From positions 62,001 through 126,000 of the IMG/VR virus record IMGVR_UViG_3300009108_000751: 64,000 nt of DNA. One strand, written 5' to 3'. Shown here in pieces: positions 2,303 to 63,804 of this stretch. How positions within the stretch are numbered: the stretch's first letter is position 1; every line of letters begins with the position of its first letter. Made by a program: the position numbers and the translations under genes. The notes under the pieces were generated by a model. The model saw only the letters and a list, made by a program, of their open reading frames with translations. It ran no database searches and was not told where the DNA came from.

Positions 2303-3070
2303 TTGACAACTACCAAAAAAGGCAAAGGTAAGCGCAGAAGAAAAAATACAGATCCCAAAGTAGCCCAAAAGAAAAAGCAGATAAAGCTGTATTTTAATGA
2401 AGGTACGCAGAAAGCAATAGAAGAATTCCAGGCGGCAGAAACTGATGAAGAAAAAAATAAGATCTACACTGAGTCTATTCTTCCGGCATTTGACAAGCTT
2501 TCAGAAAACTTAATCTTCATTCATAAGTTCACATCACTTCATGAATCTTACGAGGATTTAAAAAATGACTGCGTTACTTTTCTATATGAGACGCTTTATA
2601 AGTTTGATCCATCGAGAGGGACAAAGGCGTTTTCATATTTTAATGTCGTTGCAAAGAATTTTTTGATTATTAAGTCTAAGCAGAAGACAGCTTTTTTAAG
2701 GAGAAGCGTAAGTATAGAAGATGAAAGAATGTTTTCTGCGGGAGAAAGGCACTCTTACCAAGAAAAAAATGTAGTCGATAGTCCCGTAGCATCTCTGGTA
2801 AAAGAAGATGATCTTAGGCTGATATTTGGTATGCTTAAGCACCTCACAGGAGAGGCGAGAACTGACAATGAAAAAGCTTGCATCAACGCAATCACTACGC
2901 TGTTTGAAAACGCAAATGATCTAGAGTTTCTAAATAAGCGTGCAGTTTTTGTCTATCTTAGAGAGATGAGCGGACTATCACCTAAACAGCTTACGACTAC
3001 GATATCCAACCTTAAGAAAAAATATAGAGCATTGAAAGAAAACGATGAGTTCAGAATCTTCTTCGAATGA
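2303..3070 (+). CDS. gp55: T4 gp55-like late-transcription sigma factor (TTG start)
   Basis: EDLKNDCVTFLYETLYKFDPSRGTKAFSYFNVVAKNFLI resembles sigma region 2 of gp55 (F-D/N-P-x-K/R...FxYF); YFN motif after basic N-tail; no region 4 seen. Confidence 0.8.
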   Translation: MTTTKKGKGKRRRKNTDPKVAQKKKQIKLYFNEGTQKAIEEFQAAETDEEKNKIYTESILPAFDKLSENLIFIHKFTSLHESYEDLKNDCVTFLYETLYKFDPSRGTKAFSYFNVVAKNFLIIKSKQKTAFLRRSVSIEDERMFSAGERHSYQEKNVVDSPVASLVKEDDLRLIFGMLKHLTGEARTDNEKACINAITTLFENANDLEFLNKRAVFVYLREMSGLSPKQLTTTISNLKKKYRALKENDEFRIFFE

Positions 3071-3368
3071 TCCAAAATCTAAAGAAGAGATTTGGACAGA
3101 AATATATCAGAATGCCTTCCAGGATAGGGAGAAAGCTAGTATGCTGGTTACCAATCTGTGGAAGGAAATAACAGCCGACCCGGAAAAACATATCCTGTAC
3201 GGAACTACAGTATCAAAATACCTAGAAAGAATGGCAAAGTCAAACGACCAGCTTGTTAAGCTAGCAGAGCTTATGCAAAAATCTGATATCGTTGCTGAAG
3301 AAGAAGATATTGACTTAGACGACGTGTACAGCAAGATGGATACAGTAAAAATAAAGCCGTCAGAGTAA
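3045..3368 (+). CDS. Hypothetical helical protein downstream of sigma factor
   Basis: 107-aa ORF overlapping sigma stop, helical/coiled pattern, acidic C-terminus. Confidence 0.65.
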   Translation: MSSESSSNDPKSKEEIWTEIYQNAFQDREKASMLVTNLWKEITADPEKHILYGTTVSKYLERMAKSNDQLVKLAELMQKSDIVAEEEDIDLDDVYSKMDTVKIKPSE

Positions 3369-3371
3369 ATT

Positions 3372-5018
3372 ATGAGCATGGAAGATTTAAAACATGGCGG
3401 TGACGTCCTCCCCGTACTTAATCAAAATTCAACAGTCATCAAGCAGGCATTGGTCCTGGAAATTGTTGATAACCCGGCTCAATTCAAAAATAATGACTTT
3501 CTTGATGTATTTCTCAAGAAGATCGGAAATGCTCCTACTCCCTATTTGAAGACTAGTCTACCAGGTCCTCTTAGAAGGCAGCTCAAGATGGCTCCGAGAA
3601 ATGCCGTGATTGCTATCTTGCTAGACGATACAAATGCAGCCTCCGGCGGCGCAAAGCTTTTTTATCCTCTTTTTTCCCAGCATTTATCCCTCCCAGTAAA
3701 ACCAGGAGAAAACGTATGGATTATCTCTGAAGCGCTACAAAGTCAATTCAGTGTAACTAAGAGCGAGGTACCGCAAGGAGATTCTGCAGTCGACGGAGAA
3801 TTAATTTGTAGCGGATACTGGATGTCAAGAGTAGTAGCTCCTGACTATGCAGACGATATAAATTTCACTCACGCCGATCGAAGCCGAAGCCAGGAATATG
3901 TTAACCAGCAAAAAGGAAAACGGCCAGCCCAGCTGGCACCCCCGCCGTTTCACAATGGTATTTATTCTAATGATCCTGAAAATCCAGGGTTGGTAAACAC
4001 TTACACTTTGCCGGCCACTAATGATTACAACAGAATCTACATAGAATCTCAATCTAATAGAAGGACGACTAGAGAGCCTGTTCCAGAATTTACCAAGCGC
4101 CCGGGTGATATAGTAATTCAGGGTTCTAACAATGCTTTGATCTGTGTAGGTGAGGATCGACCTAATCCTGGTAACGGTGAGTCCAACGTAAATTACAAAT
4201 CTGAGGCTCCTCTTGAAAAACCACGCCTCGATGCAAAAGCAGGCACTATTGACATGGTCGCCGGAAGAGCCCTGATTAGAGAGGGCGAAAGCTTTAAGTT
4301 CGATCCAGAAAAAATAACTACGGTTGCTAATGCCCGTGAAGGTGAAACAGAGAAAGAAAAGAGATCCTGGGCAAAACCCAATAATGAGCCGTCTCAAAAG
4401 ATAAACGAGGGTGACATAAGCTTTATTAAGGATCTTTCTCGAGTTTATATTTCTATGAAGACAGACGGTGACAAGAACCTTGGATATGAGGAGCCTAAGT
4501 TTCTTCCAAAGATAGGTGAAGAATTTCCTTCTGCTCCTGTAGACAGTTCTGCTTACGTGATATCACGTGCCAAAGAGATAAGAATAGTTGCAGCTCAAGA
4601 AAGAGACGAAGAAGGTGCAATATCCACTGATGTTGCTACTGCAGGCAGCATCCGCATAATCAAAGAAGGTACGAGAGACGAAGATGGGCACTCAATTGAC
4701 CAGGGTGTCATCCAGTTCAATCCTGACGGAACATTAGTCATCGACAGTCCATCGATGATCATTGGCTCTGGTAAAGAGGGTGCAAATGGCGAAGGTACAC
4801 AGGTCTACATCGGAAATAATGCCACTGAACCCCTAGTTCTTGGAAACGCGCTAAGAGTCTTTTTAGGAAAGCTGCTAGGTGCTATGGAGGCAAATGCCCC
4901 CAATTTTGTCGCCACGGGCGTTGGGCCGGGCATATTAAACCCTGCAATTCTAAGTGAGATATCAGCTTTTAAAGCCCAGCTGGATACGATTCTCAGTAAG
5001 AATGCTAAGACTAAGTAG
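3372..5018 (+). CDS. Baseplate central spike/hub, gp5/VgrG-like, no lysozyme domain seen
   Basis: OB-fold-like segment SLPVKPGENVWII, GDIVIQGSNNALI, C-terminal beta-strand repeats and EPLVLGNAL; lies upstream of gp25-like gene. Confidence 0.65.
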   Translation: MSMEDLKHGGDVLPVLNQNSTVIKQALVLEIVDNPAQFKNNDFLDVFLKKIGNAPTPYLKTSLPGPLRRQLKMAPRNAVIAILLDDTNAASGGAKLFYPLFSQHLSLPVKPGENVWIISEALQSQFSVTKSEVPQGDSAVDGELICSGYWMSRVVAPDYADDINFTHADRSRSQEYVNQQKGKRPAQLAPPPFHNGIYSNDPENPGLVNTYTLPATNDYNRIYIESQSNRRTTREPVPEFTKRPGDIVIQGSNNALICVGEDRPNPGNGESNVNYKSEAPLEKPRLDAKAGTIDMVAGRALIREGESFKFDPEKITTVANAREGETEKEKRSWAKPNNEPSQKINEGDISFIKDLSRVYISMKTDGDKNLGYEEPKFLPKIGEEFPSAPVDSSAYVISRAKEIRIVAAQERDEEGAISTDVATAGSIRIIKEGTRDEDGHSIDQGVIQFNPDGTLVIDSPSMIIGSGKEGANGEGTQVYIGNNATEPLVLGNALRVFLGKLLGAMEANAPNFVATGVGPGILNPAILSEISAFKAQLDTILSKNAKTK

Positions 5019-5648
5019 ATGGCGCTCGACCAACAAAAGCTTGTAGATGGTCTAAAAGACGCTTTTGCAAAAGGCAGAGAAGTAGAAGAGAAAACTACAC
5101 AAGATGACCAGGGAAACGAGGTTAAGGTAAGCGAGGCTAAGAATAGTCAATCTGACATCGCCGGCTTTATCGCAGATGCCATCATCACCTATGCTAGTGA
5201 TGCCGAGATAATGATTCCCATACCTTCGACGTTAATAGTGATAGCACCTCCAGCCCCACCCGATGCAGCCTCTGCAGGCGCGAAGCTGAAAGTGAAAACT
5301 GCCCAAGTGGGAAAGCCCGCGCTTCAGACAGCTATTCTTACCAGCATGAACACACAAGATGTGGCGATGACTGCCATCACGAGCGGGATCGTGGCATACG
5401 TTGCGGCTTCATTTATTGCGTTTGCAAATTCCATCAATACCATCACAGGTGCAGGAGCTGCAGTGATGGCTGTACCACCTCTGTTGGTTACGCCTCTTGC
5501 TGTAGGAATAGCGGGAGGTGAGGAGGATGATGTGATCAATGCGATGGCTACTGTGATTCACGCTTCTTTTCTGAGTACCCTCTTTACGGGAGCAGGCGCT
5601 AATACTGCTCCACCTGCTGCAGGTCCAATTGTCAGTACTCTCATGTAG
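5019..5648 (+). CDS. Ala-rich hydrophobic protein, candidate spike-tip/spike-associated protein
   Basis: Between spike and gp25 genes; three imperfect D-x3-(I/M)(A/T)-x2-I-x2-(Y/S) helical repeats. Confidence 0.4.
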   Translation: MALDQQKLVDGLKDAFAKGREVEEKTTQDDQGNEVKVSEAKNSQSDIAGFIADAIITYASDAEIMIPIPSTLIVIAPPAPPDAASAGAKLKVKTAQVGKPALQTAILTSMNTQDVAMTAITSGIVAYVAASFIAFANSINTITGAGAAVMAVPPLLVTPLAVGIAGGEEDDVINAMATVIHASFLSTLFTGAGANTAPPAAGPIVSTLM

Positions 5649-5651
5649 AGT

Positions 5652-5660
5652 ATATTTAAC
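5652..5660 (+). promoter_or_regulatory. Candidate late promoter ATATTTAAC
   Basis: ATA-N-TTA motif in intergenic gap before gp25-like gene; recurs in most larger intergenic gaps. Confidence 0.55.
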
Positions 5661-5727
5661 TGTTGAGCATGAATACTGATTAATAAAGTCAGTGTAGTAG
5701 TTAGTTATCTACAGGGTTGTGTACAAA

Positions 5728-6201
5728 ATGGCAGCTATAAGCTTTAAGAACGTGGGTGAGAAACTCGACGAATATCAAAATCGTCAAGCAGACATTTCAC
5801 CTACACCTATCGGTATTGCTACTCCCTTAAGGCTGAGTACTACGCAGCAAGATATTTTTGAGATGCACTACGCATTACAAGATCAAATTGAGGATAACTT
5901 AAGAAACCTTATTTTGACAAACCACGGAGAAAGATTAGGTTTATATGACTTTGGTGCAAATTTACAACCCATACTTTTTTCTTTAACGGGCGCATCTTTT
6001 GAAACTGAGTGCATGAGAAGAATTAAGGTGGCAGCAAGAAAATATTTGCCCTTTATTGATCTGGAGACTTTTGAGGTAGCAACTGACAATAGATCAACAA
6101 GTAAGAGTCTTGCGACCATAGCAATCACCCTGGCGTATGGAATACCTGCCTTAGGTGTGACTGGTAAAAAGATGAGCGTCTTGCTCACTGCAGGAGGATA
6201 A
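5728..6201 (+). CDS. gp25: Baseplate wedge protein gp25-like (ATG 5728 preferred to GTG 5719)
   Basis: QIEDNLRNLILTNHGERLGLYDFGANLQPILF is the gp25/GPW signature; followed by KYLPFIDL. Confidence 0.9.
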   Translation: MAAISFKNVGEKLDEYQNRQADISPTPIGIATPLRLSTTQQDIFEMHYALQDQIEDNLRNLILTNHGERLGLYDFGANLQPILFSLTGASFETECMRRIKVAARKYLPFIDLETFEVATDNRSTSKSLATIAITLAYGIPALGVTGKKMSVLLTAGG

Positions 6202-6204
6202 TAA

Positions 6205-8049: not shown

Positions 8050-8058
8050 GGTACATAG

Positions 8059-12600: not shown

Positions 12601-13121
12601 GACCGCGAAGCTTTGTAAGCTCTTCTAATATTACTGATTTTAGCGCTGCAAAAGCTCCTCTTTATGAGATACCTCCCAACGATCAGCCCCAGGATGACGC
12701 AAGGTTCTCTATAGATTTCTCAGTAACGTCTGCGTTAAACGAAGATATTGTCACTATGTTTGGAACGCTTGACGAGATAGATGACGCTCTTGGCGGAGCC
12801 AATTTACAGTTTTCAGCTGATTATCCCCAACTCCAGGTTTTGCGTGATAATTACTTTAACAAGCTAGAGGAAAAAGTAAGCTTTAAGCAATTTTTAGAAT
12901 TCTTTAGGTGGTTTGATACATCTGTTGGAACCATGCTTGAACAACTCGTTCCAAAAAATTCTAATTTCTTAGGTGTTAACTTTGTTATAGAGCCTCACAG
13001 TCTAGAGCGAGCCAAAGTTCAGTACCAGTATAATGGACAGTATATCGGCGAAGACTTTAGGACTGATCTTAAGGGCCAGTATCTATTACAGCTAATTGAA
13101 GGAAGAGCGAGCAAGTTCTGA
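9609..13121 (+). CDS. Large baseplate protein with LamG/concanavalin-like domains and gp7/gpI-like KGT segment
   Basis: FSHIAAVYD...LKLYLNSKL...FSGSLDEVRIF and FSGEVAQVRFWSKALT (LamG); IISSKGTIHSVKAAL. Confidence 0.65.
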   Translation: MSSKDRLQNQRPGVFRPSVVRDEGGGAGVVRFITRADLDAGISYEDYFIYDESTGIKSTQQIPVDFSKFQNHTFFNSAQANVNVTFNSLINHYPFDGSRKELEKFLNGLTGFDNYVLSQFPTNLGALVFSGSTSGAADSGTYIEVKDFSGADFVDFSSDRSGKSVLALDEKSYTVETQIFPAPLANGNEVLFQKVSGSTNGYTMAMKSNVSTTAAEVMFAIRSGSANLIVSASIPKNEFSHIAAVYDRSKDEGRLKLYLNSKLVGTSSNTAIFGPIDFNNSSLFIGTGSIHQGILHDSANFTPSRTFSGSLDEVRIFQEARTEHQLKSNQERNVFASDPLRLYYKFNEPSSSFGDNSIVLDSSGKSLHSRVSNYTVYNRVTSSYPAALSSEERKFNPVLFPQFEKVIDLNEKLLASASTYDNANPNLITRLVPSHYFDEGKNYFAMNTTDGDLILPYTGSSIPGSGDLGSSQVLTAMLFVWAKFFDELKTSTDQFSKVLDPAYTSDEGLSDSFIMFLVNHYGFEPPPILTKATAEQYFHGENVKGTYTNIAESLQSIRNQILRRFLVNIKDIISSKGTIHSVKAALRATGLDPDILVRIKEYGGPKKFSFAQMRTNRSTIQSSIDFSGSMNNTRNETIDAQGFTTSSPRLIADFLTGSRRSVGFPEPVGTFVQPNTTFGGYHGVSNDLSDGLLTSGSWSYEGIYRFPVSGSFALTQSAARIHITGTTAPSTKHGVAANLLVMSGASPSVKLFLRATTDAYTAAAKRPLEITLPGPDVMDGEKWNLSFGRIRNDQAGTHLSSSYFLRCAKQEGGRIFESYTTASFYKEDPTGTASKVVFQKSGSLNTSGSFIVIGSQSLDTSANLFLNGPDIDDQAQITNFSGEVAQVRFWSKALTEPEWKEHVRNPTSVGVEAPRKNFNFNTAITGAFERLRMDLSIDQPISASDSSGQIILTDFSQNNIHGTGSAFEASKTLFNFEKVNFTTLPPAFDDLENSNKIRPRSFVSSSNITDFSAAKAPLYEIPPNDQPQDDARFSIDFSVTSALNEDIVTMFGTLDEIDDALGGANLQFSADYPQLQVLRDNYFNKLEEKVSFKQFLEFFRWFDTSVGTMLEQLVPKNSNFLGVNFVIEPHSLERAKVQYQYNGQYIGEDFRTDLKGQYLLQLIEGRASKF

Positions 13122-14512
13122 TGAAGACAGGTAAAAATACATCAAAATTCCAATATAATTCATCAAAAGAGAACCAGATAACGGGTTCAAGCGCCCAGTT
13201 TCCTGTTCGTAGACTCTACGGGGGCATACCACCTGTCGCTGCTACTTCAACACTAACGTTTACCGGGACAGGGTCTATCGGAGCCACTATAACATTAGTA
13301 AATACTGCCCAGCTAAGCAGGACCTATACAGTCGCTTCTTCACTCGACGCTGCAGCAAGAGAGTTCCGAGCAACATCTGCGACCCAGGCCCGAGATGATC
13401 TGACAACATGCATCGAAGCTTCAGCAGGCCACAATGGAACAATCATCACTTCAGGGACCTCGACCACCATATTGACCCTCACCCAAGCTGAAGTCGGTAA
13501 GGCTGGAAATACTATAATTCTCTCAAGCAGCTTGAACGTGACCCTGTCTCCCCTAACAGGGAGCTTCTCAGGTGGTCAGGATGGTCGCGACCAGAAATAT
13601 AACCCGCATGCTAAAGAGTACGTTATTGGTGGGGGCTCCGGGAGCTTCACAGCCCAGATTGATCCTTATCGTCAAGGTGTTTCAATACTAACAGATAATC
13701 AGCGCGCCCAGGCAGCACTTCCAACTTTTGATCCAAAGAATACAGGCATTGAAGAAAAATATATTTTTGGGCAGTCCACGCTCTCAGAATTTGCTTGGCC
13801 CTTCATAGAGAAGCCAAACATGGAAAACATCGGTGCAACCGAAGGGCTTTTTGCTTTTGCTCAGGGTAGTATAGCAACTTCATCATTTGTCGATCTAGAG
13901 TATGAAGTTATACAGGCAGATAAGCGATATATTCTAGGAAACATCCTTAACGGGACTGCGGAAGTTTTATCAAGCGTCCGATCAGCATTTGATCCAAAGA
14001 TTTTCTCTCGATCCCTTGATCCAATAGGATCTGATACCCGAACAGGAATCAAAGCGGATATCATGGAGGGAAATTCTTTCTATATGAAGGGTACAAGCAC
14101 GGTTAAGCCCTTAATCCCAATGACTGTGTTTGGCAATTCTCCTTTCGTAGATGGATTTGGAGTTGCAGGTATTGGAATCACAGGTAATCCTGCCAGTATG
14201 TCTCTAGCATCAGGTACAGTTTTTGCTCCTAATAGAAGACATGCCCTGGGAGAGAAATTATACTTTAATGAGACTTACGGCCCAGTACCCTTCGATGAGA
14301 CAGATTTTGAGAGCAGAATGTTTACAAAGGCCCAGATAAACAGTCTTAATTTAGATGCTGACTTTAAGACTGCGCTGCTTAACAATGTGTCAGGATCCAC
14401 AGAAGATCTAATCCCAGACGGTTTTAAATCCGCACGAACAGGATTTATATTTACAAACAATGGATTAAACGTGGACTCCATCGCGTTTGGAGGCCTGAGA
14501 AGAGATGCCTAA
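13121..14512 (+). CDS. Virion structural protein, S/T/G-rich, unknown fold
   Basis: Coupled TGATG start; composition and context. Confidence 0.5.
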   Translation: MKTGKNTSKFQYNSSKENQITGSSAQFPVRRLYGGIPPVAATSTLTFTGTGSIGATITLVNTAQLSRTYTVASSLDAAAREFRATSATQARDDLTTCIEASAGHNGTIITSGTSTTILTLTQAEVGKAGNTIILSSSLNVTLSPLTGSFSGGQDGRDQKYNPHAKEYVIGGGSGSFTAQIDPYRQGVSILTDNQRAQAALPTFDPKNTGIEEKYIFGQSTLSEFAWPFIEKPNMENIGATEGLFAFAQGSIATSSFVDLEYEVIQADKRYILGNILNGTAEVLSSVRSAFDPKIFSRSLDPIGSDTRTGIKADIMEGNSFYMKGTSTVKPLIPMTVFGNSPFVDGFGVAGIGITGNPASMSLASGTVFAPNRRHALGEKLYFNETYGPVPFDETDFESRMFTKAQINSLNLDADFKTALLNNVSGSTEDLIPDGFKSARTGFIFTNNGLNVDSIAFGGLRRDA

Positions 14513-28376: not shown

Positions 28377-28477
28377 ACAAGAGATCCGGCAACGTATGAC
28401 ATAGGTAATCTCAGGGCTTCTGATGCTTATTCTCCCATTTTAATACCCACTAAAGATAAAATCTTTGATATTTCTCT

Positions 28478-28494
28478 ATAGTTACTACCGTTAG
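28478..28494 (+). promoter_or_regulatory. Candidate late promoter ATAGTTACTACCGTTAG
   Basis: 16/17 identical to 57787-57803; intergenic, upstream of small ORF at 28518. Confidence 0.6.
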
Positions 28495-28517
28495 CGCGAA
28501 AGACCGGAGATCATGCT

Positions 28518-28745
28518 TTGCCAGGACAGATATTTGAGACAACTGATTTGGCCCTGGCTGCCTTCTGCAAGAGCAAAGGGTTAGTCCTGGCAGACCTTCG
28601 AAAGAACGATCGAGGTATCGTGACTTTTATCTTTAAAGATGAAAAAAATCTCTCAAAATCGATGATGATCGCATATTTAAACTCGGATGAGCGGAGCTTC
28701 CATGAGTCGCTGAAGGCACTCAAGAGGCTCGCATCATCGATATGA
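28518..28745 (+). CDS. Small DUF5659-like protein (TTG start)
   Basis: FETTDLALAAFCKSKGLVL...VTFIFKD...SFHESLKALK resembles the T-x-D-L-x-L-A-A-(Y/F)...F-x-F pattern recalled for DUF5659; GGAG at 28506. Confidence 0.6.
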   Translation: MPGQIFETTDLALAAFCKSKGLVLADLRKNDRGIVTFIFKDEKNLSKSMMIAYLNSDERSFHESLKALKRLASSI

Positions 28746-28793
28746 ATATAAAAATATAAAAATCACATCCTGATCCTCACTCCATTCCCAAGA

Positions 28794-31180: not shown

Positions 31181-31211
31181 AAAGGGGTCCGCTTCGGCGG
31201 GCCCCTTTTTT
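31181..31211 (+). terminator. Rho-independent terminator with C(UUCG)G tetraloop
   Basis: GGGGTCCGC-TTCG-GCGGGCCCC followed by TTTTTT. Confidence 0.92.
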
Positions 31212-31221
31212 ATTTGCTTGC

Positions 31222-31230
31222 ATATTTAAC
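31222..31230 (+). promoter_or_regulatory. Candidate late promoter ATATTTAAC
   Basis: Immediately after terminator, before ATG 31264. Confidence 0.6.
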
Positions 31231-51422: not shown

Positions 51423-51431
51423 TTATGCGTG

Positions 51432-51440
51432 ATAGTTAAT
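51432..51440 (+). promoter_or_regulatory. Candidate late promoter ATAGTTAAT
   Basis: Intergenic, upstream of 141-aa/TerL pair. Confidence 0.55.
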
Positions 51441-51891: not shown

Positions 51892-53495
51892 TGGCTTCTA
51901 AGCCAGGAAAACAAGCTCAAGTAAAAGAGATCATCCAGTGCGGAAAAGACTCTCTTTACTTCATGCAAAAATATGTAAAGATCCAGCATCCCACTAGAGG
52001 TTTGATCTCATTTGACACGTTTCCATTTCAAGATGACTGTGTCACGCATTTTAACGATAATCGATTTAATGTTATTCTCAAGTCCCGACAGCTAGGGCTC
52101 TCCACCCTGGTCGCGGCCTACGCATTATGGATGGGGATCTTCCAGCGAGACAAGAACATACTGGTTATTGCGACAAAGCTTTCAGTCGCTCAAAACTTCA
52201 TTAGAAAAGTCAAGGTAATGCTGAGGTCACTACCTCCGTGGCTTGTATTACCTGAAGTTACCGCTGATAACAAGCAGACAATAGAGTTTAGTCACGGCTC
52301 AGTTATCAAGGCTATTCCAACCTCCGATGATGCAGGTCGTTCTGAAGCGCTGTCGCTTCTCATTATAGATGAGGCCGCATTCGTTAAGAACTTTGATACG
52401 CTGTGGATGGGTTTATATCCTACCTTATCCACAGGTGGTCGAGCCATTGTTCTCTCTACTCCAAATGGCGTGGGCGGTCAATATCATAAGCTCTACACAG
52501 AAGCAATGTTAGGTGAGAATGAGTTTAACTCAATTAACTTACCCTGGAGCGTGCATCCAGAGAGAGATGAAGAGTGGTTCCAGAGAGAAACTCGCAACAT
52601 GTCAAAGAGGCAGATTGCCCAAGAGCTTCTGTGTGACTTTGTGGCATCAGGTGAGACATTTCTTCAATCTGATCATCTTGAGTGGATTAGGGAGAATATT
52701 CGAGAGCCAAGAGAAAGAAAATTTGAAGACAGGAATTTGTGGGTCTGGGAGAACCCATTGTCTGCTCACAAGTATGTAATGTCTGCAGACGTCTCTCGAG
52801 GAGATGCAAAGGATTATTCCACATGCCACGTCATCGATGTTACGACATCGGAAATTGTCGCTGAATACAAAGGTAAAATACCACCAGATAGATTTGGGGA
52901 AATGCTAGATGATCTAGGGCGTCAGTACAACAATGCTTTACTAGCCCCTGAAAACAACACCTTTGGCTACACTACTGTTATGAAACTAAAAGAGCTTAAT
53001 TACCCTAATCTTTACTATCAAAAAGCCCGCGGTGTTTACCTGGGAAGCTACACACCCCAGTCTGAGAAAGAAGTGGGTGGATTTTCCACGCAAGGACAGT
53101 CTCGAGTTCAAATTATTTCTAAGCTCGAAGAGATGATTCGTAACAAGATGCTTAAGACATACTCACAGCGCCTTTATGATGAGCTTAAAACCTTTGTCTG
53201 GAAAGGGCAAAAACCCCAGGCAATGAAAGGCCAGCACGATGATCTCGTGATGAGCTTAGCGATTGGAACCTGGCTTTTCGATATATACGGAGGCGGTGGC
53301 GGATCGTCTAATTCTGACCTTAACGAAGCAATGATCGCAGCAATGTCTACGGAGTCTCGTCCTGCCTCTGATCTTTCTCAAGATAGAAGAGCACCGTTCC
53401 CTACCAACCCATTCAAACCTGTCCAGCAAGAATCGTGGGAAAAGGGTAATAAAGGGTTTGACCCTAAGAGAGATTATGACTGGTTGCTTAAATAG
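51891..53495 (+). CDS. gp17: Terminase large subunit, T4 gp17-like
   Basis: KSRQLGLST Walker A, LLIIDEAAF Walker B, STPNG, SADVSRG...DYS and HDDLVMS nuclease motifs. Confidence 0.95.
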   Translation: MASKPGKQAQVKEIIQCGKDSLYFMQKYVKIQHPTRGLISFDTFPFQDDCVTHFNDNRFNVILKSRQLGLSTLVAAYALWMGIFQRDKNILVIATKLSVAQNFIRKVKVMLRSLPPWLVLPEVTADNKQTIEFSHGSVIKAIPTSDDAGRSEALSLLIIDEAAFVKNFDTLWMGLYPTLSTGGRAIVLSTPNGVGGQYHKLYTEAMLGENEFNSINLPWSVHPERDEEWFQRETRNMSKRQIAQELLCDFVASGETFLQSDHLEWIRENIREPRERKFEDRNLWVWENPLSAHKYVMSADVSRGDAKDYSTCHVIDVTTSEIVAEYKGKIPPDRFGEMLDDLGRQYNNALLAPENNTFGYTTVMKLKELNYPNLYYQKARGVYLGSYTPQSEKEVGGFSTQGQSRVQIISKLEEMIRNKMLKTYSQRLYDELKTFVWKGQKPQAMKGQHDDLVMSLAIGTWLFDIYGGGGGSSNSDLNEAMIAAMSTESRPASDLSQDRRAPFPTNPFKPVQQESWEKGNKGFDPKRDYDWLLK

Positions 53496-53518
53496 CTTTA
53501 CAAAACCCACAAAAGATT

Positions 53519-53525
53519 ATATTTA
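53519..53525 (+). promoter_or_regulatory. Candidate late promoter ATATTTA
   Basis: Intergenic upstream of portal gene. Confidence 0.55.
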
Positions 53526-53568: not shown

Positions 53569-55464
53569 ATGGCCGAAAACGATAATTTCTTTAATAGGCT
53601 CACCAGGCTCTTTAGATCTGGCCCACTTGTTAAGAGAAAAGTTAAAGCAGCGAGAGCTCCCAACATGGGAACTCTTCTCCAGCAGTTTCAAAAATCTCAA
53701 AGTCACGTTTACGCAAACGCGATCAGCGCATACGGGATGTACGATCGCATGTCCCGATATGCCGACTTCCAGGAAATGGAAGCAACTCCTGAGATTGCAT
53801 CTGCTCTCGACATCTATGCAGATGAGTCCGTATCACAAGATGAGGTCGGACGCTGCTTGCACATCTATTCAGAGAATGATAAGATTAGAAGGGTTTTAGA
53901 GGAGCTTTTTTATGACAACCTCAACATCGACTTCAATCTTAATCCATGGGCAAGAAATCTTTGTAAGTACGGGGACTTCTTTCTCTTTCTAGACATATCT
54001 CCAGAATACGGTGTCCTGAACGGGATTCCGATCCCTGTTAATGAGATCGAACGCGAAGAAGGCTTTGATCCTGATGATCCGATGGCAGTGCGATTCCGGT
54101 GGGTAACTCAAGGAAATAAGATTCTTGAGAACTGGCAGATCGCCCACTTTAGGCTTTTAGGTAACGATGCATTTCTCCCCTATGGCTCTTCTGTTATCGA
54201 ACCAGCACGAAGGATTTGGCGACAGCTTATCCTCATTGAAGATGCAATGCTTGTTTATCGCGTGATTCGTTCACCGGAACGACGGGTTTTTAAAATCGAT
54301 GTCGGAAACGTTCCACCAGAAGAAGTTCAAAACTACATGCAGCAGGCGAAGTCTGCGCTTAGAAGCTCGCAAGTTGTAGACAAAACTACGGGACGTGTCG
54401 ATCTTCGCTACAACCCGCTTTCAGTTGATGAAGATTATTTCCTTCCCGTCCGCGGCCAAGCAGATGGTACTGCTATCGATACACTTGCAGGCGGGCAGAA
54501 CACCACAGCTATTGAGGATGTTGAGTACATCCAAAAGAAACTTTTTGCGGCACTTAAGGTTCCAAAGGCTTACTTGGGCTACGACGAAATGCTTAGCTCT
54601 AAAGCAACATTGGCCCAAGAAGATATTCGTTTCTCTAGGACGATCAACAAGGTCCAAAGGGTCATGATATCAGAGCTTAACAAGATCGCAGCTGTTCATC
54701 TTTATGCTAACGGCTTTGACGGAGAAGATCTTGTAGACTTCACTCTTAAGCTTTCAAATCCATCAACCATAGCACAACAACAAAAGCTTGAGCTCTTTAG
54801 AACAAAGTTCGAAATCGCCGGCCAATCACCTGAAGGTATGCTTTCTAGAGACTTCTTGAGAAAACGTGTTCTCGGTCTTACAAACGAAGAAATCAAGATG
54901 ATTGAAGAGCAAAAAGAAGAAGATAAGATGCGTGATCTGGAGGTTGAAGCTATTACGCTTCCTGAGACTGAAGGTGAAGCTGCATCCCCTGCAGGCATTG
55001 ACTTAGGCGAGGAAGAACCTGCCCCACCCGAAGAAGAAGATCTTGAGACAGCACAAGAGAAAAAGGGTGATGACTTACTTTTAGGGACTGATGATGTTCC
55101 CCAAGAGGAAGCAGAAGAAAAGCCGGCAAAATCCGAAAAGCCTGTAAAAGCAAGCTCAAATGTAAAGGGGCCCAACAAGCCACGATCAGCTAACAAAGCG
55201 TTTGATGGAAGAGTTTATCAACTGAGGCCGCAAGGTTCCCCGGGATACACAAGCTCTAAGAAAGAAAGATACATTAATAACAGTCTTGGTGACAAGGAAG
55301 CTATTAGCCCAGACTTAAGTGTTAGGTTCGAAAGTCAAGTGAATAGACAAAACCAGATGTCTGCACAGCTCAAACAGACTTTAAAAAGCCTTGAGAAAAG
55401 CATAGGTAATATAGGAAAGTCCTCTGCTTTGCTCGTTGAGGGAGATAATGATGACGAGACATAA
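53569..55464 (+). CDS. gp20: Portal protein, T4 gp20-like, with acidic C-terminal extension
   Basis: PEIASALDIYADE, LCKYGDFF, EDAMLVYRVIRSPERRVFKIDVGN, EDYFLP, DVEYIQKKLFAALKVPK motifs. Confidence 0.95.
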   Translation: MAENDNFFNRLTRLFRSGPLVKRKVKAARAPNMGTLLQQFQKSQSHVYANAISAYGMYDRMSRYADFQEMEATPEIASALDIYADESVSQDEVGRCLHIYSENDKIRRVLEELFYDNLNIDFNLNPWARNLCKYGDFFLFLDISPEYGVLNGIPIPVNEIEREEGFDPDDPMAVRFRWVTQGNKILENWQIAHFRLLGNDAFLPYGSSVIEPARRIWRQLILIEDAMLVYRVIRSPERRVFKIDVGNVPPEEVQNYMQQAKSALRSSQVVDKTTGRVDLRYNPLSVDEDYFLPVRGQADGTAIDTLAGGQNTTAIEDVEYIQKKLFAALKVPKAYLGYDEMLSSKATLAQEDIRFSRTINKVQRVMISELNKIAAVHLYANGFDGEDLVDFTLKLSNPSTIAQQQKLELFRTKFEIAGQSPEGMLSRDFLRKRVLGLTNEEIKMIEEQKEEDKMRDLEVEAITLPETEGEAASPAGIDLGEEEPAPPEEEDLETAQEKKGDDLLLGTDDVPQEEAEEKPAKSEKPVKASSNVKGPNKPRSANKAFDGRVYQLRPQGSPGYTSSKKERYINNSLGDKEAISPDLSVRFESQVNRQNQMSAQLKQTLKSLEKSIGNIGKSSALLVEGDNDDET

Positions 55465-57765: not shown

Positions 57766-57786
57766 TTTCAAGTTTGTTTTGAGAGT

Positions 57787-57803
57787 ATATTTACTACCGT
57801 TAG
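57787..57803 (+). promoter_or_regulatory. Candidate late promoter ATATTTACTACCGTTAG
   Basis: 16/17 identical to 28478-28494. Confidence 0.6.
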
Positions 57804-58310: not shown

Positions 58311-58319
58311 TATTTTTTA

Positions 58320-59097: not shown

Positions 59098-59115
59098 TTT
59101 TTTCTTCGAATAATC

Positions 59116-59124
59116 ATATTTAAC
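59116..59124 (+). promoter_or_regulatory. Candidate late promoter ATATTTAAC
   Basis: Intergenic upstream of scaffold/capsid genes. Confidence 0.6.
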
Positions 59125-59144
59125 AGTGTAGATGGGTGAGGACT

Positions 59145-60566: not shown

Positions 60567-60597
60567 AGAAAACTTTAAAATCTAAGGGAGATTTATA

Positions 60598-62514
60598 ATG
60601 TCTAAGTTTTCACTCGAAACGCTAGCCGAAGGAATTCGGTCGCGTCACATGGGTGAGGAGAACTCCCGCTTGGTCGAAAAGTGGTCTCGCACCGGTCTGC
60701 TCCGCGGCCTGGAATCAACAAAGCGCGAAAACATGGCGCGCCTTCTTGAGAACCAGACTGCAGAGCTTCTTCGTGAGCAAAGCACAATCGGCACAGGCGG
60801 CGGAGCTGGCACCGCTTCTGGTGACCTTCGCGGTTTCTCCAATATCGCCTTTCCAATCGTTCGTCGTGTATTCGGCGGACTTGTCGCAAATGAGCTGGTA
60901 TCCATCCAGCCCATGAGCTTGCCTTCTGGCCTGCTCTTTTATCTTGACTACACCTACGGTTCTAACGTTGGTGGTGACGCATCTCTCACAACGGGCGATG
61001 CAGGAACCTACGACAAAGAAACGTATCAGCGTGGTCAATCCATCTATAACAACCCAACTGGCAAGGGCGTACGCTCTGGTTCATTGGCAACAGGCGGTCA
61101 GTATGACTTGGTCGGTGCAACTTACTCTAAGGTGCACAGCTCCTCGATCTCACCAACCGTTATGTTTGCTGGTGCACACGGTGCAAACTCATCCTTGACA
61201 TCCGGTTCGTTGTGCCATGCCACAGGTTCAGATGCTAAGTTGCTCCAATTCGATCCTCAAGTTCTTGACTTGATCGAAAACGATCCCGGTCTTGACGGTG
61301 ATGGACGCTTCTGCATCGTCATTGTGGACGTCACTGATGCACCCTTTAACAATGTCGATCTTACGAACGCCAAGGACATTTCCTTGTTCTCAGCAGTTCC
61401 TGAGGTTCGTACAGGTGTTAAAGAGCTTGGTGCTAGCTTCCAGGGCGGCAAAGGTATTCTTAACCTCCGTCGCTTGAACCAGCTTGGTACGTTTGCGAAC
61501 AACAAGTTTACCGCAGATCCCATGGTAACAAGAAGCACATCAAATGCTGCTCTCTTGACAGTTATGTCTGGTAACTTCAGCGGTAAAATTGATGCCGGTG
61601 ATGCTGCTACAGCATACCTCTCAGCATCATATGCCATTGGCCCAACATTGAATGTAGAAGACGGTTCTGGTTCTACCCTTACCATTCCTTCATTCGAATC
61701 TGATTTCGGTACTACACCTTCACCAGTGATCCCTGAAATCGACATTAAGGTTGAGTCCATCGCAGTTACAGCTGCTACACGCAAGCTGAGAGCTCGTTGG
61801 TCGCCAGAATTGGCACAGGACCTTAACGCATACCACAGCCTTGACGCTGAGGTTGAGTTGACACAGATCCTTTCTGAGCAAGTTGCTCTTGAAATCGATC
61901 GTGAAATCCTGAATGACCTGCTTAGCGAAGCCCAGGGCGCAAACCTTTACTGGTCACGTGCTCCAGGCAAGTTCCTGAACAAGGAAACAGGCGCCGAAGT
62001 TAAGTTGAATGACAGCTTATCTGCAGGTCCTCGTTTCACAGGCACAGTTCGCGAATGGTACGAGACCCTGGTCGAGTCCGTTATCGATGTTGCTAACACC
62101 ATCCACCGCAAGACACTCCGTGGTTCCGCGAACTTCGTGGTCACCTCTCCGGATGTCTGCACAATGTTCGAAGCTTCAGTGATGTATCGCCCAAGCCTCA
62201 GCATTGACAGCGAAGGTCAGGTTTCCTCCCCATTCAGCCTCGGTGCTGAAAAGGTTGGTACCTTGAGCAACCGCTTTACGGTCTACAAGGACCCATACTT
62301 CCCTCGCAACAAGATTCTTGTTGGTTATAAGGGTGGTAGCTACCTTGAGACAGGATACGTTTATGCTCCGTATGTTCCGCTGATCGTCACACCAACGATC
62401 TTCGCGCCAGAAGACTTCACCCCTCGTAAGGGCGTGATGACTCGCTACGGCAAGAAGATGGTTCGCGCTGACTTCTACGGTACCGTTACGGTTGCTGACT
62501 TGAACGTCATCTAA
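60598..62514 (+). CDS. gp23: Major capsid protein, T4 gp23-like, with ~250-aa insertion
   Basis: LLENQ, AFPIVRRVF, VSIQPMSLPSGLLFYLDY, IPEIDIK, TRKLRARWSPELAQDL, EIDREIL, YAPYVPL, GVMTRYG motifs. Confidence 0.96.
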   Translation: MSKFSLETLAEGIRSRHMGEENSRLVEKWSRTGLLRGLESTKRENMARLLENQTAELLREQSTIGTGGGAGTASGDLRGFSNIAFPIVRRVFGGLVANELVSIQPMSLPSGLLFYLDYTYGSNVGGDASLTTGDAGTYDKETYQRGQSIYNNPTGKGVRSGSLATGGQYDLVGATYSKVHSSSISPTVMFAGAHGANSSLTSGSLCHATGSDAKLLQFDPQVLDLIENDPGLDGDGRFCIVIVDVTDAPFNNVDLTNAKDISLFSAVPEVRTGVKELGASFQGGKGILNLRRLNQLGTFANNKFTADPMVTRSTSNAALLTVMSGNFSGKIDAGDAATAYLSASYAIGPTLNVEDGSGSTLTIPSFESDFGTTPSPVIPEIDIKVESIAVTAATRKLRARWSPELAQDLNAYHSLDAEVELTQILSEQVALEIDREILNDLLSEAQGANLYWSRAPGKFLNKETGAEVKLNDSLSAGPRFTGTVREWYETLVESVIDVANTIHRKTLRGSANFVVTSPDVCTMFEASVMYRPSLSIDSEGQVSSPFSLGAEKVGTLSNRFTVYKDPYFPRNKILVGYKGGSYLETGYVYAPYVPLIVTPTIFAPEDFTPRKGVMTRYGKKMVRADFYGTVTVADLNVI

Positions 62515-62523
62515 GCGACAATA

Positions 62524-62572
62524 GAAACTTCGGTTTCATGAAGGGGAGTCCGAAAGGGCTCCCCTTTTTTTT
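62524..62572 (+). terminator. UUCG mini-hairpin plus GAAA-tetraloop intrinsic terminator
   Basis: GAAAC-TTCG-GTTTC (62524-62537); GGGGAGTCC-GAAA-GGGCTCCCC (62543-62564) followed by T8. Confidence 0.92.
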
Positions 62573-62606
62573 GTCTCTTTATTTCCTTAAGATTCCAGCA
62601 CGGGAA

Positions 62607-62705
62607 CATATCTAATAGTAGGCCCGTCACATTGCATAAGGGTGAACTCGCCACCGTGCCGGAATCATGCGAACAAAATAAAGGAGAAAATTATGCCAAA
62701 GGTTA
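62607..62705 (+). repeat. 99-bp perfect direct repeat, copy 1 (promoter-like motif + leader + RBS + first codons)
   Basis: CATATCTAATAGTAGGCCCG...AAAGGAGAAAATTATGCCAAAGGTTA identical to 63150-63248. Confidence 0.97.
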
Positions 62706-63061: not shown

Positions 63062-63089
63062 AAGAAAACTCAAAAGTGTTATTGCAATC

Positions 63090-63115
63090 AAGGTGCTCAA
63101 TCGAGCACCTTTTTT
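63090..63115 (+). terminator. Intrinsic terminator
   Basis: AGGTGCTC-AATC-GAGCACCT followed by TTTTT. Confidence 0.85.
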
Positions 63116-63149
63116 GTTTGAATATTTTCTTCTTTTTTAAGATCTTCCC

Positions 63150-63248
63150 CATATCTAATAGTAGGCCCGTCACATTGCATAAGGGTGAACTCGCCACCGT
63201 GCCGGAATCATGCGAACAAAATAAAGGAGAAAATTATGCCAAAGGTTA
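63150..63248 (+). repeat. 99-bp perfect direct repeat, copy 2
   Basis: Identical to 62607-62705; period 543 bp. Confidence 0.97.
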
Positions 63249-63682
63249 CGTATTCAGATTCGAAGGGGCTCGTCCAGACGTCAGGTGCTGGGATGGCTCT
63301 AACCGGCTTCATGCATGGTCAAAAATGCCCACAGAAGTCGGTAACAAGCACAGACACGCTTACTGTTGAAGACAGTGGCAAGTTAATTACCCTGACGGGA
63401 TCAGCATTTACTTTGTCGCTGCCCAGTGTCTCAGCGGCAAAAGGATGCCACTATACGATCGTTGCTGGTCAAGCTGCGAATTATGTCCTTTCTGAGCTCG
63501 TCGGAACTGACGACAACGTTTTGACGATGGTAAGCGTAAATGCGTCTGCTACTGAAAGAGATCACGCTTTTACCACAGCTACTCTGAGTGGCGGAGCTAT
63601 CGGAGACAGGTTTTACGCCGTCTCTAACGGAACTTGGTGGGTCATCACGGCCTTCGCCAATGCTGCCGTAGCCGCCGCATAA
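63236..63682 (+). CDS. Small beta-rich virion protein, candidate capsid decoration/head fibre (true start ATG 63236)
   Basis: MPKVTYSDSKGLVQTSGAG; TLTVEDSGKLITL...LSLPSVSAAKGCHYTIV. Confidence 0.55.
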   Translation: MPKVTYSDSKGLVQTSGAGMALTGFMHGQKCPQKSVTSTDTLTVEDSGKLITLTGSAFTLSLPSVSAAKGCHYTIVAGQAANYVLSELVGTDDNVLTMVSVNASATERDHAFTTATLSGGAIGDRFYAVSNGTWWVITAFANAAVAAA

Positions 63683-63727
63683 TATAGTGGTTGACAGCTA
63701 AGACTTAGTACTGTCACACTAGAAGAG

Positions 63728-63760
63728 AAAGGCGCCCCCAAGTGGGGCGCCTTTTTTTTT
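63728..63760 (+). terminator. Intrinsic terminator
   Basis: GGCGCCCC-CAAGT-GGGGCGCC followed by T9. Confidence 0.92.
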
Positions 63761-63797
63761 GTTCGTTTTTTCGTCTAGACCTAAGTCTCGTGACTTC

Positions 63798-63804
63798 ATA
63801 CTTA
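63798..63804 (+). promoter_or_regulatory. Candidate late promoter ATACTTA
   Basis: After terminator, before GTG start at 63831. Confidence 0.5.

What the first reader, a model, noticed from the sequence alone, without database searches (positions are those of the whole stretch)
2303..63804. Recurrent ATA-N-TTA motif in intergenic gaps: candidate promoter of the gp55-like sigma
Seen: ATATTTA at 5652, 31222, 53519, 57787, 59116; ATAGTTA at 28478, 51432; ATACTTA at 63798; variant ATATCTA at 62608 and 63151. All are on the + strand about 25-85 nt before a start codon, several right after a terminator. Established: T4 gp55 recognises a single -10-like box (TATAAATA) without a -35. Inference: this phage's sigma (2303-3070) reads a different consensus, ATANTTA(A/C/T).
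Basis: partly seen in the sequence, partly recalled or inferred. Interest (0 to 1): 0.6.

Follow-up and report, generated by a model that had tools for sequence, protein, structure and literature searches.

The report
Late-gene promoter box of jumbo phage
A short DNA box, (C/T)ATA-N-TTA, sits just upstream of the virion genes of this uncultured marine jumbo phage and its relatives, and is most likely the late promoter read by the phage's own distant relative of the T4 gp55 sigma factor.

Summary

- **Coordinates:** all ten listed sites exist.
- **Chance:** across the whole window ATANTTA is not over-represented (31 found, 32.9 expected). In the 235.7-kb genome, however, 28 + strand copies lie in intergenic gaps, against 5.8±2.4 in shuffled gaps and 4 on the − strand.
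- **Position:** 19 of 26 + strand ATATTTA copies lie 10–70 nt upstream of a gene start (7.8% expected, p=3e-16).
- **Which bases matter:** every position counts except the N. There is no −35 element.
- **Genes served:** baseplate wedge, terminase, portal, head, adaptor, sheath, tube and fibre genes. A second class, GTGTAA-N17-TATAAT, precedes replication genes and a block of small genes.
- **Relatives:** the core TA(T/C/G)TTA holds the same positions in relatives whose sigma is only about 50% identical.
- **Sigma:** the 255-aa protein is a distant gp55 relative (structure Z 10.9, rmsd 2.9 Å over 114 residues; profile comparison E 9e-5).
- **Difference from T4:** the box differs from TATAAATA at −9 and −8, bases that gp55 reads in protein pockets. 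The residue that contacts −8 in T4 (T99) is an invariant Asn here.
- **Not shown:** transcription start sites, and binding of this sigma to the box.

I rate it a new variant of a known kind.

The parts
2303..3070 (+). Gene for a 255-aa sigma-like protein. The N-terminal domain (about residues 29-148) resembles the gp55 sigma-region-2 domain. It also has an extra roughly 100-aa helical C-terminal domain and a conserved hydrophobic C-terminal tail.
   Evidence: phrog_234 'late sigma transcription factor' E=3e-4, with 22 of 25 homologues hitting it (best 6.8e-8). Structural match to T4 gp55 7d7c_F: Z 10.9, rmsd 2.9 Å over 114 residues. hhalign against a gp55 family profile: E 9.3e-5, probability 59%. 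It is the only sigma-region-2-like hit in the genome.
5651..5658 (+). TATATTTA box, 60 nt before the gp25-like baseplate wedge gene (5719-6201).
   Evidence: The orthologous gap in relatives keeps TATATTTA, CATATTTA, TTATTTA or GATACTTA.
14446..14453 (+). TATATTTA inside the 3' end of gene 13121-14512, 52 nt before the start of the 1299-aa gene at 14505.
28477..28484 (+). TATAGTTA box in the 518-nt gap 28377-28894.
28672..28679 (+). CATATTTA box in the same long gap, 216 nt before the 746-aa gene at 28895.
31184..31212 (+). GC-rich hairpin followed by a T run: an intrinsic-terminator-like site after gene 28895-31135.
   Evidence: Sequence read directly.
31221..31228 (+). CATATTTA box directly after the terminator, about 35 nt before the in-frame ATG at 31264.
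51431..51438 (+). GATAGTTA box, 27 nt before the 141-aa gene (51466) that heads the large-terminase operon (51891-53495).
53518..53525 (+). TATATTTA box, 43 nt before the portal gene (53569-55464).
57786..57793 (+). TATATTTA box, 19 nt before the 165-aa gene at 57813 in the head-gene block.
59115..59122 (+). CATATTTA box before the roughly 473-aa gene (59136/59145-60566). The major head protein gene (60598-62514) follows with no box of its own.
62540..62567 (+). Strong terminator-like hairpin after the major head protein gene.
62607..62614 (+). CATATCTA variant box after the terminator. It belongs to a leader repeated at 63150.
   Evidence: The variant class is not enriched.
63090..63111 (+). 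Terminator-like hairpin.
63150..63157 (+). CATATCTA variant box. This is the second copy of the duplicated leader, before a paralogous small gene.
63722..63760 (+). Strong terminator-like hairpin (17 pairs).
63797..63804 (+). CATACTTA box, 26 nt before the head-tail-adaptor-like gene that starts at 63831 and runs off the window.

Best explanation
The box (C/T)ATA-N-TTA (N mostly T) is the single-element late promoter of this uncultured marine jumbo phage.

Inferred mechanism: host RNA polymerase core carrying the phage's 255-aa gp55-like sigma (window 2303-3070) opens DNA at the box. By analogy with T4 the box would span -13 to -6. No -35 contact is needed. Transcription would start about 6 nt after the last A and produce the mRNAs for baseplate, terminase, portal, head, adaptor, sheath, tube and fibre genes.

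Early and replication genes instead use sigma70-like GTGTAA-N17-TATAAT promoters.

Compared with T4's TATAAATA, the box is degenerate at -9 and has T instead of A at -8. That matches changes in the pocket residues gp55 uses to read those bases (T99 to an invariant Asn, H95 to an invariant Phe). The tyrosine that stacks on A(-12) is kept.

Shown here: the enrichment, strand bias, position, per-base constraint, gene-class partition, conservation across the clade, and homology of the sigma to gp55.
For: 1. **Enrichment.** 28 gap copies on the + strand against 5.84±2.41 in shuffles and 4 on the - strand. ATATTTA: 16 against 1.69 and 1.
2. **Unseeded ranking.** ATATTTA is the second most frequent 7-mer in gaps and 24-fold enriched over coding DNA.
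3. **Position.** 19 of 26 ATATTTA copies lie 10-70 nt before a start codon (p=3e-16).
4. **Per-base constraint.** The consensus is in the upstream zone 19/26 times. Single substitutions at positions 2, 3, 5, 6 or 7 drop this to 8-33%. At position 1, G and T drop it to 0-18% and C reaches 3/7. Position 4 tolerates A, C and G (30-50%). The final A is required, with ATATTTC/G/T at 2/21, 2/18 and 4/30. That argues against a plain sigma70 hexamer.
5. **No -35.** No position from -45 to -2 is informative. G is enriched at the position that would be +1 under T4 geometry (16 of 30).
6. **Gene class.** 10 of 13 functionally annotated downstream units are virion or packaging genes, against 0 of 7 for the GTGTAA-N17-TATAAT class (Fisher p=0.003).
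7. **After terminators.** Four sites follow intrinsic terminators, and those gaps hold no other recurrent promoter-like element.
8. **Conservation in relatives.**
   - In 70 loci whose sigma is about 50% identical, TATATTTA is the top gap 8-mer (19 on the gap + strand, 2 on the gap - strand, 13 coding).
   - The orthologous gap before the baseplate genes keeps the core while its flanks diverge.
   - In loci with GC of 50% or more, 15 of 21 + strand TACTTA copies are in gaps.
   - In a complete 369-kb relative, 21 of 44 TACTTA copies lie in the 7.6% of sequence that is intergenic, many of them 15-30 nt before a ribosome-binding site and ATG.
9. **Sigma.** Matches to gp55 as listed. No other sigma-region-2 hit and no RNA polymerase genes in the genome.
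10. **Residue register.** gp55 N13, E70, D74, F86 and Y97 align to N32, D85, D89, F101 and Y112. H95 and T99 align to the invariant F110 and N114. gp55 inserts the bases at -12, -9 and -8 into pockets formed by Y97, by N13 and H95, and by T99 respectively (PMC7892883).
11. **T4 consensus absent.** TATAAATA never occurs in + strand gaps.
Against: - No transcription start sites are available. No listed RNA run holds the sequence.
- The sigma-to-box link rests on analogy and on the absence of another candidate, in a genome CheckV rates only 70% complete.
- Sequence homology to gp55 is weak for the single protein: phrog E 3e-4, no Pfam hit, and no PDB hit by sequence. The residue register comes from an alignment with 59% probability.
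- Unlike gp55, the protein has an extra C-terminal domain. Its fold gave no clear match when searched alone.
- No gp45-type or DnaN-type clamp was detected, and no gp33-type co-activator was identified, though none was searched for by family. A T4-style activation complex is therefore not supported.
- Some sites precede genes that are not structural (methyltransferase, polynucleotide-kinase-like, AAA ATPase).
- My gene calls are ORF-based, not from a trained gene finder.
Confidence: 0.72

Rival explanations
1. The box is a -10 element read by the host's own sigma (housekeeping or alternative), not by the phage sigma. It would be a -35-less host promoter of the type (T/C)ATATT.
For: TATATT and CATATT, the first six bases of the 8-mer, resemble TATAAT and keep A at hexamer position 2 and T at position 6. 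In the cultured relative Flavobacterium phage immuto, TATATTTAGG also occurs in what look like host-type early promoters.
Against: The two bases after that hexamer are as constrained as the rest. ATATTTC/G/T and ATATTAA fall to background. The phage has a distinct and abundant GTGTAA-N17-TATAAT class for early and replication genes, and the two classes partition by gene function. There is no -35 or extended -10 TG. The box stays constant across relatives from under 38% to over 55% GC, which presumably infect different hosts.
Confidence: 0.1
2. The box is a phage late or middle promoter, but it is read by a different phage factor. Candidates are a sigma or activator encoded in the missing roughly 30% of the genome, or a factor working with the 80-aa sigma-region-4-only protein (genome 34441-34683, - strand).
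For: The contig is 70% complete. A stand-alone Sigma70_r4 protein exists (PF04545, 2e-9). Nothing links the 255-aa sigma to the box directly.
Against: The 255-aa sigma and the box co-occur in every relative examined, including complete genomes. The sigma gene sits at the head of the baseplate module in conserved synteny, even in Flavobacterium phage immuto. It is the only protein in the genome with a sigma-region-2-like promoter-melting domain. A single-box, -35-less architecture is what gp55-type sigmas read (PMC2988020).
Confidence: 0.1
3. The box acts at the RNA level, as a processing site, a translation enhancer or a protein-binding site in 5' leaders, rather than as a promoter.
For: It lies 16-60 nt before start codons, where leader elements also lie. 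No start-site data exist.
Against: Four copies sit just after strong intrinsic terminators, where a new promoter is needed and no other candidate is present. Distance to the start codon is variable (16-60 nt), unlike ribosome-linked elements. The architecture and gene class match gp55-type promoters.
Confidence: 0.05
4. The recurrence is chance or a by-product of AT-rich spacers.
For: The whole-window count equals the shuffle expectation.
Against: None of 1000 gap shuffles reach the observed count. Gap GC is nearly the genome's. The strand asymmetry is 28 to 4. The motif is conserved in GC-rich relatives as TACTTA.
Confidence: 0.01

Closest known systems
Bacteriophage T4 late promoters (TATAAATA) read by gp55
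   Same: A single box of about 8 bp at the -10 position, with no -35 conservation (PMC2988020; PMC7892883). It precedes virion genes. The skeleton (T/C)-A-T-A-x-x-T-A is shared. The sigma ends in a hydrophobic tail: LDFLYE in T4, and EFRIFFE or KFKLF here.
   Different: The consensus differs at -9 (degenerate, T preferred) and -8 (T instead of A). TATAAATA itself is absent from + strand gaps. The sigma is 255 aa against 185 aa and has an extra C-terminal helical domain. The residues aligned to H95 and T99 are Phe and Asn. No gp45 clamp was detected and no gp33 co-activator was identified. The replicase is DnaE-type.
Late promoter variants of T4 relatives (KVP40, 44RR, S-PM2; Aeh1 with a/gC at -13/-12)
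   Same: These are in-silico consensus boxes derived upstream of late genes in phages that carry gp55 homologues, with small departures from TATAAATA (PMC2988020).
   Different: Those variants change the upstream edge of the box (-13/-12). This one changes the -9/-8 bases that gp55 reads in pockets. It belongs to a far more distant sigma family, with more than 2000 metagenomic members and none annotated.
Sigma70-type two-element promoters (-35/-10)
   Same: An A/T-rich box near -10, with A and T at the positions equivalent to -11 and -7 if the first six bases are taken as the hexamer.
   Different: There is no -35 element and no 17-nt spacer partner, and two extra bases are invariant. The phage has a separate class of that kind, GTGTAA-N17-TATAAT.
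Bacteroidota promoters (-7 box TAnnTTTG; recalled from memory, not tested against a reference)
   Same: Rich in T-A-T-T-T. The nearest cultured relative infects a Flavobacterium and shows TATATTTAGG boxes in its early region.
   Different: Most sites here are CATATTTA, which does not fit TAnnTTTG. The following base is not G-biased. This phage's early promoters carry TATAAT, not a -7 box.

Membership tests
gp55-family late sigma factors (phrog_234) | Sequence similarity to the family profile | tested here: met
   phrog_234 E=3e-4 for the window protein. 22 of 25 homologues match, best 6.8e-8. hhalign of the family against a 25-member gp55 alignment gives E 9.3e-5, probability 59%, 101 columns. 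The match is weak: no Pfam hit and no PDB hit by sequence.
gp55-family late sigma factors (phrog_234) | Sigma-region-2-like fold superposable on gp55 | tested here: met
   AF2 model (pLDDT 77.6) against 7d7c_F: Z 10.9, rmsd 2.9 Å, 114 of 137 residues aligned, model residues 29-148. This is the tightest single-domain match of that length. Isolated sigma-region-2 fragments superpose over 91-97 residues at rmsd 2.4-2.6 Å.
gp55-family late sigma factors (phrog_234) | Conserved RNA-polymerase-contact and base-pocket residues (gp55 N13, E70, D74, F86, H95, Y97, T99) | tested here: inconclusive
   In the aligned register N13, E70, D74, F86 and Y97 are kept as N32, D85, D89, F101 and Y112. H95 and T99 are replaced by the invariant F110 and N114. 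The register comes from a 59%-probability alignment.
gp55-family late sigma factors (phrog_234) | Architecture: about 185 aa, one sigma-region-2 domain, a helix-loop-helix and a C-terminal clamp-binding tail | tested here: not met
   The protein is 255 aa, with an additional roughly 100-aa helical domain (residues about 152-255) that has no clear fold match when searched alone. A conserved hydrophobic C-terminal tail is present and resembles gp55 tails.
T4-type late transcription system (gp55 + gp33 + gp45 clamp) | Phage-encoded sliding clamp (gp45) and co-activator (gp33) | tested here: not met
   PF02916 (searched in this genome only) and PF09116 (this genome, three relatives at least 91% complete, a fourth rated 74% complete, and Flavobacterium phage immuto) gave no match. 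PF00712 (this genome and the four relatives) and PF02768 (this genome only) gave none either. No gp33 family was searched. The two small genes flanking the sigma gene have no PHROG hit. This genome is only 70% complete.
T4-type late promoter | Single -10-like box, no -35 conservation | tested here: met
   Information content is confined to the 8-mer. Nothing informative lies between -45 and -2.
T4-type late promoter | Consensus TATAAATA | tested here: not met
   TATAAATA occurs twice on the + strand and never in gaps. The consensus here is (C/T)ATA(T>G,C,A)TTA.
T4-type late promoter | Placed before late (virion and packaging) genes | tested here: met
   Found before wedge, terminase, portal, head-block, adaptor, two sheath, tube and fibre genes. 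The contrast with the early class gives Fisher p=0.003.
T4-type late promoter | Transcription starts about 6-7 nt downstream, late in infection, and depends on the phage sigma | not testable with these tools
   No RNA run holding the sequence was listed, and the phage is uncultured.

The most novel reading that the evidence does not exclude
The sigma family's invariant C-terminal tail (D-x-K-F-x-L-F-COOH, or EFRIFFE in this phage) may be a sliding-clamp-binding peptide, like the LDFLYE tail of gp55.

These phages replicate with a DnaE-type Pol III alpha, and no gp45-type or DnaN-type clamp was detected in them. The partner could therefore be the host beta clamp. Late transcription in a large clade of uncultured jumbo phages would then be coupled to replication through a bacterial-type clamp, a second version of the T4 'mobile enhancer' built on different parts.
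Probability: 0.15. Interest if true: 0.75.

Novelty: new variant of a known kind. Interest (0 to 1): 0.5.

Why it matters
- **Scope.** It gives a testable late-promoter consensus, and a candidate reader, for a very large clade of environmental jumbo phages that has never been annotated. The sigma has more than 2000 homologues, found on contigs up to 369 kb.
- **Annotation.** The two promoter classes, GTGTAA-N17-TATAAT and (C/T)ATANTTA, let early and late genes be told apart directly from metagenomic sequence.
- **Specificity.** The box differs from T4's at the bases gp55 reads in protein pockets, and the aligned pocket residues differ too (T99 to Asn, H95 to Phe). That makes it a natural experiment on how gp55-type sigmas set their specificity, testable by residue swaps and in vitro transcription.
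- **Experimental route.** A cultured Flavobacterium phage shares the same sigma-baseplate synteny, which offers a way into the laboratory.

Tried and rejected
- **Whole-window enrichment.** Absent (31 against 32.9 expected). The signal appears only when strand and location are considered.
- **Nucleotide search against cultured phages.** No match.
- **Sequence searches for the sigma.** Pfam, NCBIfam and PDB-by-sequence gave nothing significant.
- **Foldseek on the full sigma model.** Only weak E-values (0.04), although nearly all top hits were sigma factors. The VIA re-alignment was needed to see the gp55 domain match.
- **C-terminal domain as sigma region 4.** Folded alone (pLDDT 76), it gave no convincing match. 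I reject this as unsupported and leave the domain unassigned.
- **RNA evidence.** No listed run holds the stretch. The listed runs are kept as contigs, so I did not use read laying.
- **Rfam.** No family in the window.
- **Phage-encoded RNA polymerases.** PF00940, PF00562 and PF04997 gave no match. The PF00940 control rang nowhere, so that result is uninformative.
- **Clamps.** No match for PF02916, PF09116, PF00712 or PF02768.
- **Literature.** No paper in the held library links ATATTTA-type boxes to phage late promoters. The searches on gp55, jumbo phages and the cultured relatives turned up none either.
- **ATATCTA variants.** Not enriched as a class.
- **Complex prediction.** Not used, because no clamp partner was identified.

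Full report
**Context.** The window is bases 62001-126000 of a 235,681-bp IMG/VR viral contig. CheckV rates it 70% complete, and the listed metatranscriptome runs from studies holding it are labelled seawater. GC is 45.7% and almost all genes are on the + strand. The window holds glycosyltransferases, the sigma candidate and a long virion module. That module includes a gp25-like and a gp6-like baseplate wedge, very large structural proteins, the large terminase, the portal and the major head protein. No cultured phage matches at the nucleotide level.

**Observation.** ATANTTA is not over-represented in the window as a whole (31 against 32.9±6.3), so taken by itself the count proves nothing. 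The signal is positional.

- Genome-wide, 29 of 64 + strand copies fall in the 6.2% of sequence that is intergenic (2.0/kb against 0.16/kb in coding DNA). Only 5 lie on the - strand of gaps.
- Dinucleotide-preserving shuffles of the gaps give 5.84±2.41 against 28 observed, and 1.69±1.28 against 16 for ATATTTA. None of 1000 shuffles reached the observed counts.
- Gaps are not notably AT-rich: 44.2% GC against 45.7%.
- An unseeded k-mer ranking of gaps puts ATATTTA second only to TATAATA. It is 24-fold enriched over coding DNA, and 16 to 1 by strand.
- Without using my gap definitions, 19 of 26 + strand ATATTTA lie 10-70 nt before a start codon (7.8% expected, p=3e-16).

**Anatomy of the box.** A single-substitution scan shows that every position matters except the fourth. 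The consensus is in the upstream zone 19/26 times. Substitutions at positions 2, 3, 5, 6 and 7 fall to 8-33%. At position 1, G and T fall to 0-18%, but C reaches 3/7, which fits the CTATTTA forms seen in relatives. Position 4 tolerates A, C and G (30-50%).

- A C or T is preferred just upstream.
- Nothing informative lies between -45 and -2, so there is no -35 element.
- G is enriched six bases after the last A (16 of 30). That would be +1 if the box occupies -13 to -6 as in T4.
- The final A is required. That argues against reading the first six bases as an ordinary sigma70 hexamer.
- The ATATCTA variants are not enriched as a class. The two copies lie in an identical duplicated leader before two paralogous small genes.

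**Two promoter classes that partition by gene function.** The box precedes:

- the gp25-like wedge gene;
- the small gene heading the terminase operon;
- the portal gene;
- two genes of the head block, the second being the gene immediately before the major head protein gene;
- a head-tail adaptor;
- two tail-sheath paralogues;
- the tail tube;
- a tail fibre gene.

A different, sigma70-like class, GTGTAA-N17-TATAAT(A), has 26 copies. Twenty-one are packed into genome 0.8-18 kb among small genes. The rest precede a DnaE-type Pol III alpha, a DNA polymerase, a helicase and a 5'-3' exonuclease.

Among functionally annotated downstream units, 10 of 13 for the box are virion or packaging genes, against 0 of 7 for the sigma70-like class (p=0.003). 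Four boxes sit directly after strong intrinsic terminators, where a fresh promoter is needed and no other recurrent element is present. T4's own TATAAATA never occurs in + strand gaps.

**Conservation.** The sigma has more than 2000 metagenomic homologues, on contigs up to 369 kb, and none carries a functional name. I fetched 80 loci around it.

- In the 70 loci whose sigma is about 50% identical, TATATTTA is the top 8-mer in gaps: 19 on the gap + strand, 2 on the gap - strand and 13 in coding DNA.
- The orthologous gap before the baseplate genes keeps TATATTTA, CATATTTA or TTATTTA in AT-rich relatives and GGTACTTAA or GATACTTA in GC-rich ones, while the flanks diverge.
- In loci with GC of 50% or more, 15 of 21 + strand TACTTA copies are in gaps.
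- In a complete 369-kb relative (56% GC), 21 of 44 TACTTA copies lie in the 7.6% of sequence that is intergenic, many of them 15-30 nt before a ribosome-binding site and ATG.

The clade-wide core is therefore TA-N-TTA. The free position follows genome composition.

The nearest cultured relative is Flavobacterium phage immuto (sigma 32% identical, annotated hypothetical). It has the same sigma-to-baseplate synteny, and TATTTAT(A)ATAA sits before its late genes. Its early region, however, also uses TATATTTAGG boxes with an upstream TTG, so that phage is a less clean case.

**The sigma.** The window protein has no Pfam hit, and NCBIfam gave only sub-threshold sigma hits (E 0.018 and 0.033). It matches phrog_234, 'late sigma transcription factor', at E 3e-4, and 22 of 25 homologues match it (best 6.8e-8).

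An AF2 model (pLDDT 77.6) gives sigma factors as nearly all its top fold hits. The tightest domain match of that length is T4 gp55 in the open complex 7d7c_F: Z 10.9, rmsd 2.9 Å over 114 residues. Isolated sigma-region-2 fragments superpose slightly more tightly over 91-97 residues. A profile-profile comparison with 25 gp55 homologues gives E 9.3e-5 and probability 59% over 101 columns.

In that register gp55 N13, E70, D74, F86 and Y97 align with N32, D85, D89, F101 and Y112. H95 and T99 align with the family-invariant F110 and N114.

According to the cryo-EM study of the gp55 open complex (PMC7892883), gp55 flips three bases into pockets:

- the base at -12 stacks on Y97;
- the base at -9 sits in a shallow pocket formed by N13 and H95;
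- the base at -8 is hydrogen-bonded by T99.

Aligned with TATAAATA, the new box keeps A(-12), is degenerate at -9 and has T instead of A at -8. The difference in the box therefore falls on the pocket-read bases, and the aligned pocket residues differ accordingly. This is an inference from a modest-confidence alignment, but it is sharply testable.

The protein is the only sigma-region-2-like gene found. No multisubunit RNA polymerase gene was detected in the available genome, and the single-subunit family search was uninformative because its control rang nowhere.

**Where it departs from T4.** The sigma is 255 aa, not 185 aa. Its extra C-terminal domain gave no clear fold match when folded alone. 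Neither a gp45-type nor a DnaN-type clamp was detected in this genome or in three relatives at least 91% complete, and the replicase is DnaE-type. The family does end in a conserved hydrophobic tail, D-x-K-F-x-L-F, or EFRIFFE in this phage. In position and character it resembles the clamp-binding tails of gp55 homologues (LDFLYE, LEKFIEE). Whether it binds a clamp is open.

**Verdict.** The box is best explained as a gp55-type, single-element late promoter with an altered consensus, read by the phage's distant gp55 relative (confidence about 0.7).

- The rivals are each at 0.1 or below: a host sigma, another phage factor, or an RNA-level signal.
- Chance is excluded.
- It is a new variant of a known kind. 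The logic is T4's, but the consensus, the sigma architecture and the apparent lack of a T4-type clamp and co-activator are different.
- The held literature has no report of such a box.
- Start-site mapping and in vitro transcription remain the decisive tests.

Noticed in passing
genome 860-18,000 (outside the window) plus scattered sites at genome 145987, 168184, 172940, 199505 and 215259: There is a second, very regular promoter class, GTGTAA-N17-TATAAT(A), with 26 copies. Twenty-one are packed among small genes at the left end. The others precede DnaE-type Pol III alpha, DNA polymerase, helicase and 5'-3' exonuclease genes. The -35-position hexamer GTGTAA is unlike TTGACA. Who reads it (an unusual host sigma or a modified one) is unexplained.
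   Followed up: partly
genome 34441-34683, - strand (L086:1483-1725): An 80-aa ORF on the otherwise nearly empty - strand. It has a Cys-rich N-terminus and a bona fide Sigma70 region 4 helix-turn-helix (PF04545, 2e-9), with no region 2. It could be a flap-binding or -35-binding accessory factor or a decoy.
   Followed up: partly
window 62515-62700 and 63062-63240: An identical promoter and leader segment of about 100 nt, including the first 21 codons of the listed ORFs, is duplicated before two paralogous small genes just after the major head protein gene. Each copy is bracketed by strong terminators. These are likely abundant late proteins such as head decoration proteins.
   Followed up: partly
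window 28377-28894: A 518-nt stretch without a convincing gene (only a 75-aa TTG ORF) carries two copies of the box (28478 and 28673) before the 746-aa gene at 28895. It has no Rfam match. Its function is unknown.
   Followed up: no
window 3045-3368: A 107-aa acidic helical protein is encoded immediately after the sigma gene and overlaps it. A gene of similar size follows the sigma homologue in Flavobacterium phage immuto. Its size and charge recall the T4 co-activator gp33, but no family hit supports that.
   Followed up: no
sigma family C-terminus (window about 3047-3067): The last 7-8 residues are conserved across the family (D-x-K-F-x-L-F, or EFRIFFE here). They resemble the clamp-binding tails of gp55 homologues, yet no phage clamp gene was found.
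   Followed up: partly
genome 128960-135232 (just right of the window): Two adjacent tail-sheath paralogues of about 1040 aa, each with its own box, are followed by the tail tube gene with a third box.
   Followed up: no
genome about 34,300-34,430: A tRNA-like 3' end (T-arm, acceptor stem and CCA) lies in the gap before the region-4 ORF. Several relatives' gaps also hold T-loop words (GGTTCGA). I did not run the tRNA finder.
   Followed up: no
G001-G004 (relatives of 270-369 kb): TACTTA is much rarer genome-wide than its reversed word. In G002 there are 20 copies against 109, and in G004 24 against 614. This may be partly TA-dinucleotide avoidance, but it would also fit selection against stray promoters.
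   Followed up: no
L121 (Flavobacterium phage immuto, NC_055915.1 58174-98824): The early region of this cultured relative has a highly repeated unit, (A)GTTGC...N...TATATTTAGGTATCAATAATTAAAAC, before nearly every small gene. Its late genes carry a shorter TATTTAT(A)ATAA. The sigma homologue (gp118) is annotated hypothetical.
   Followed up: partly
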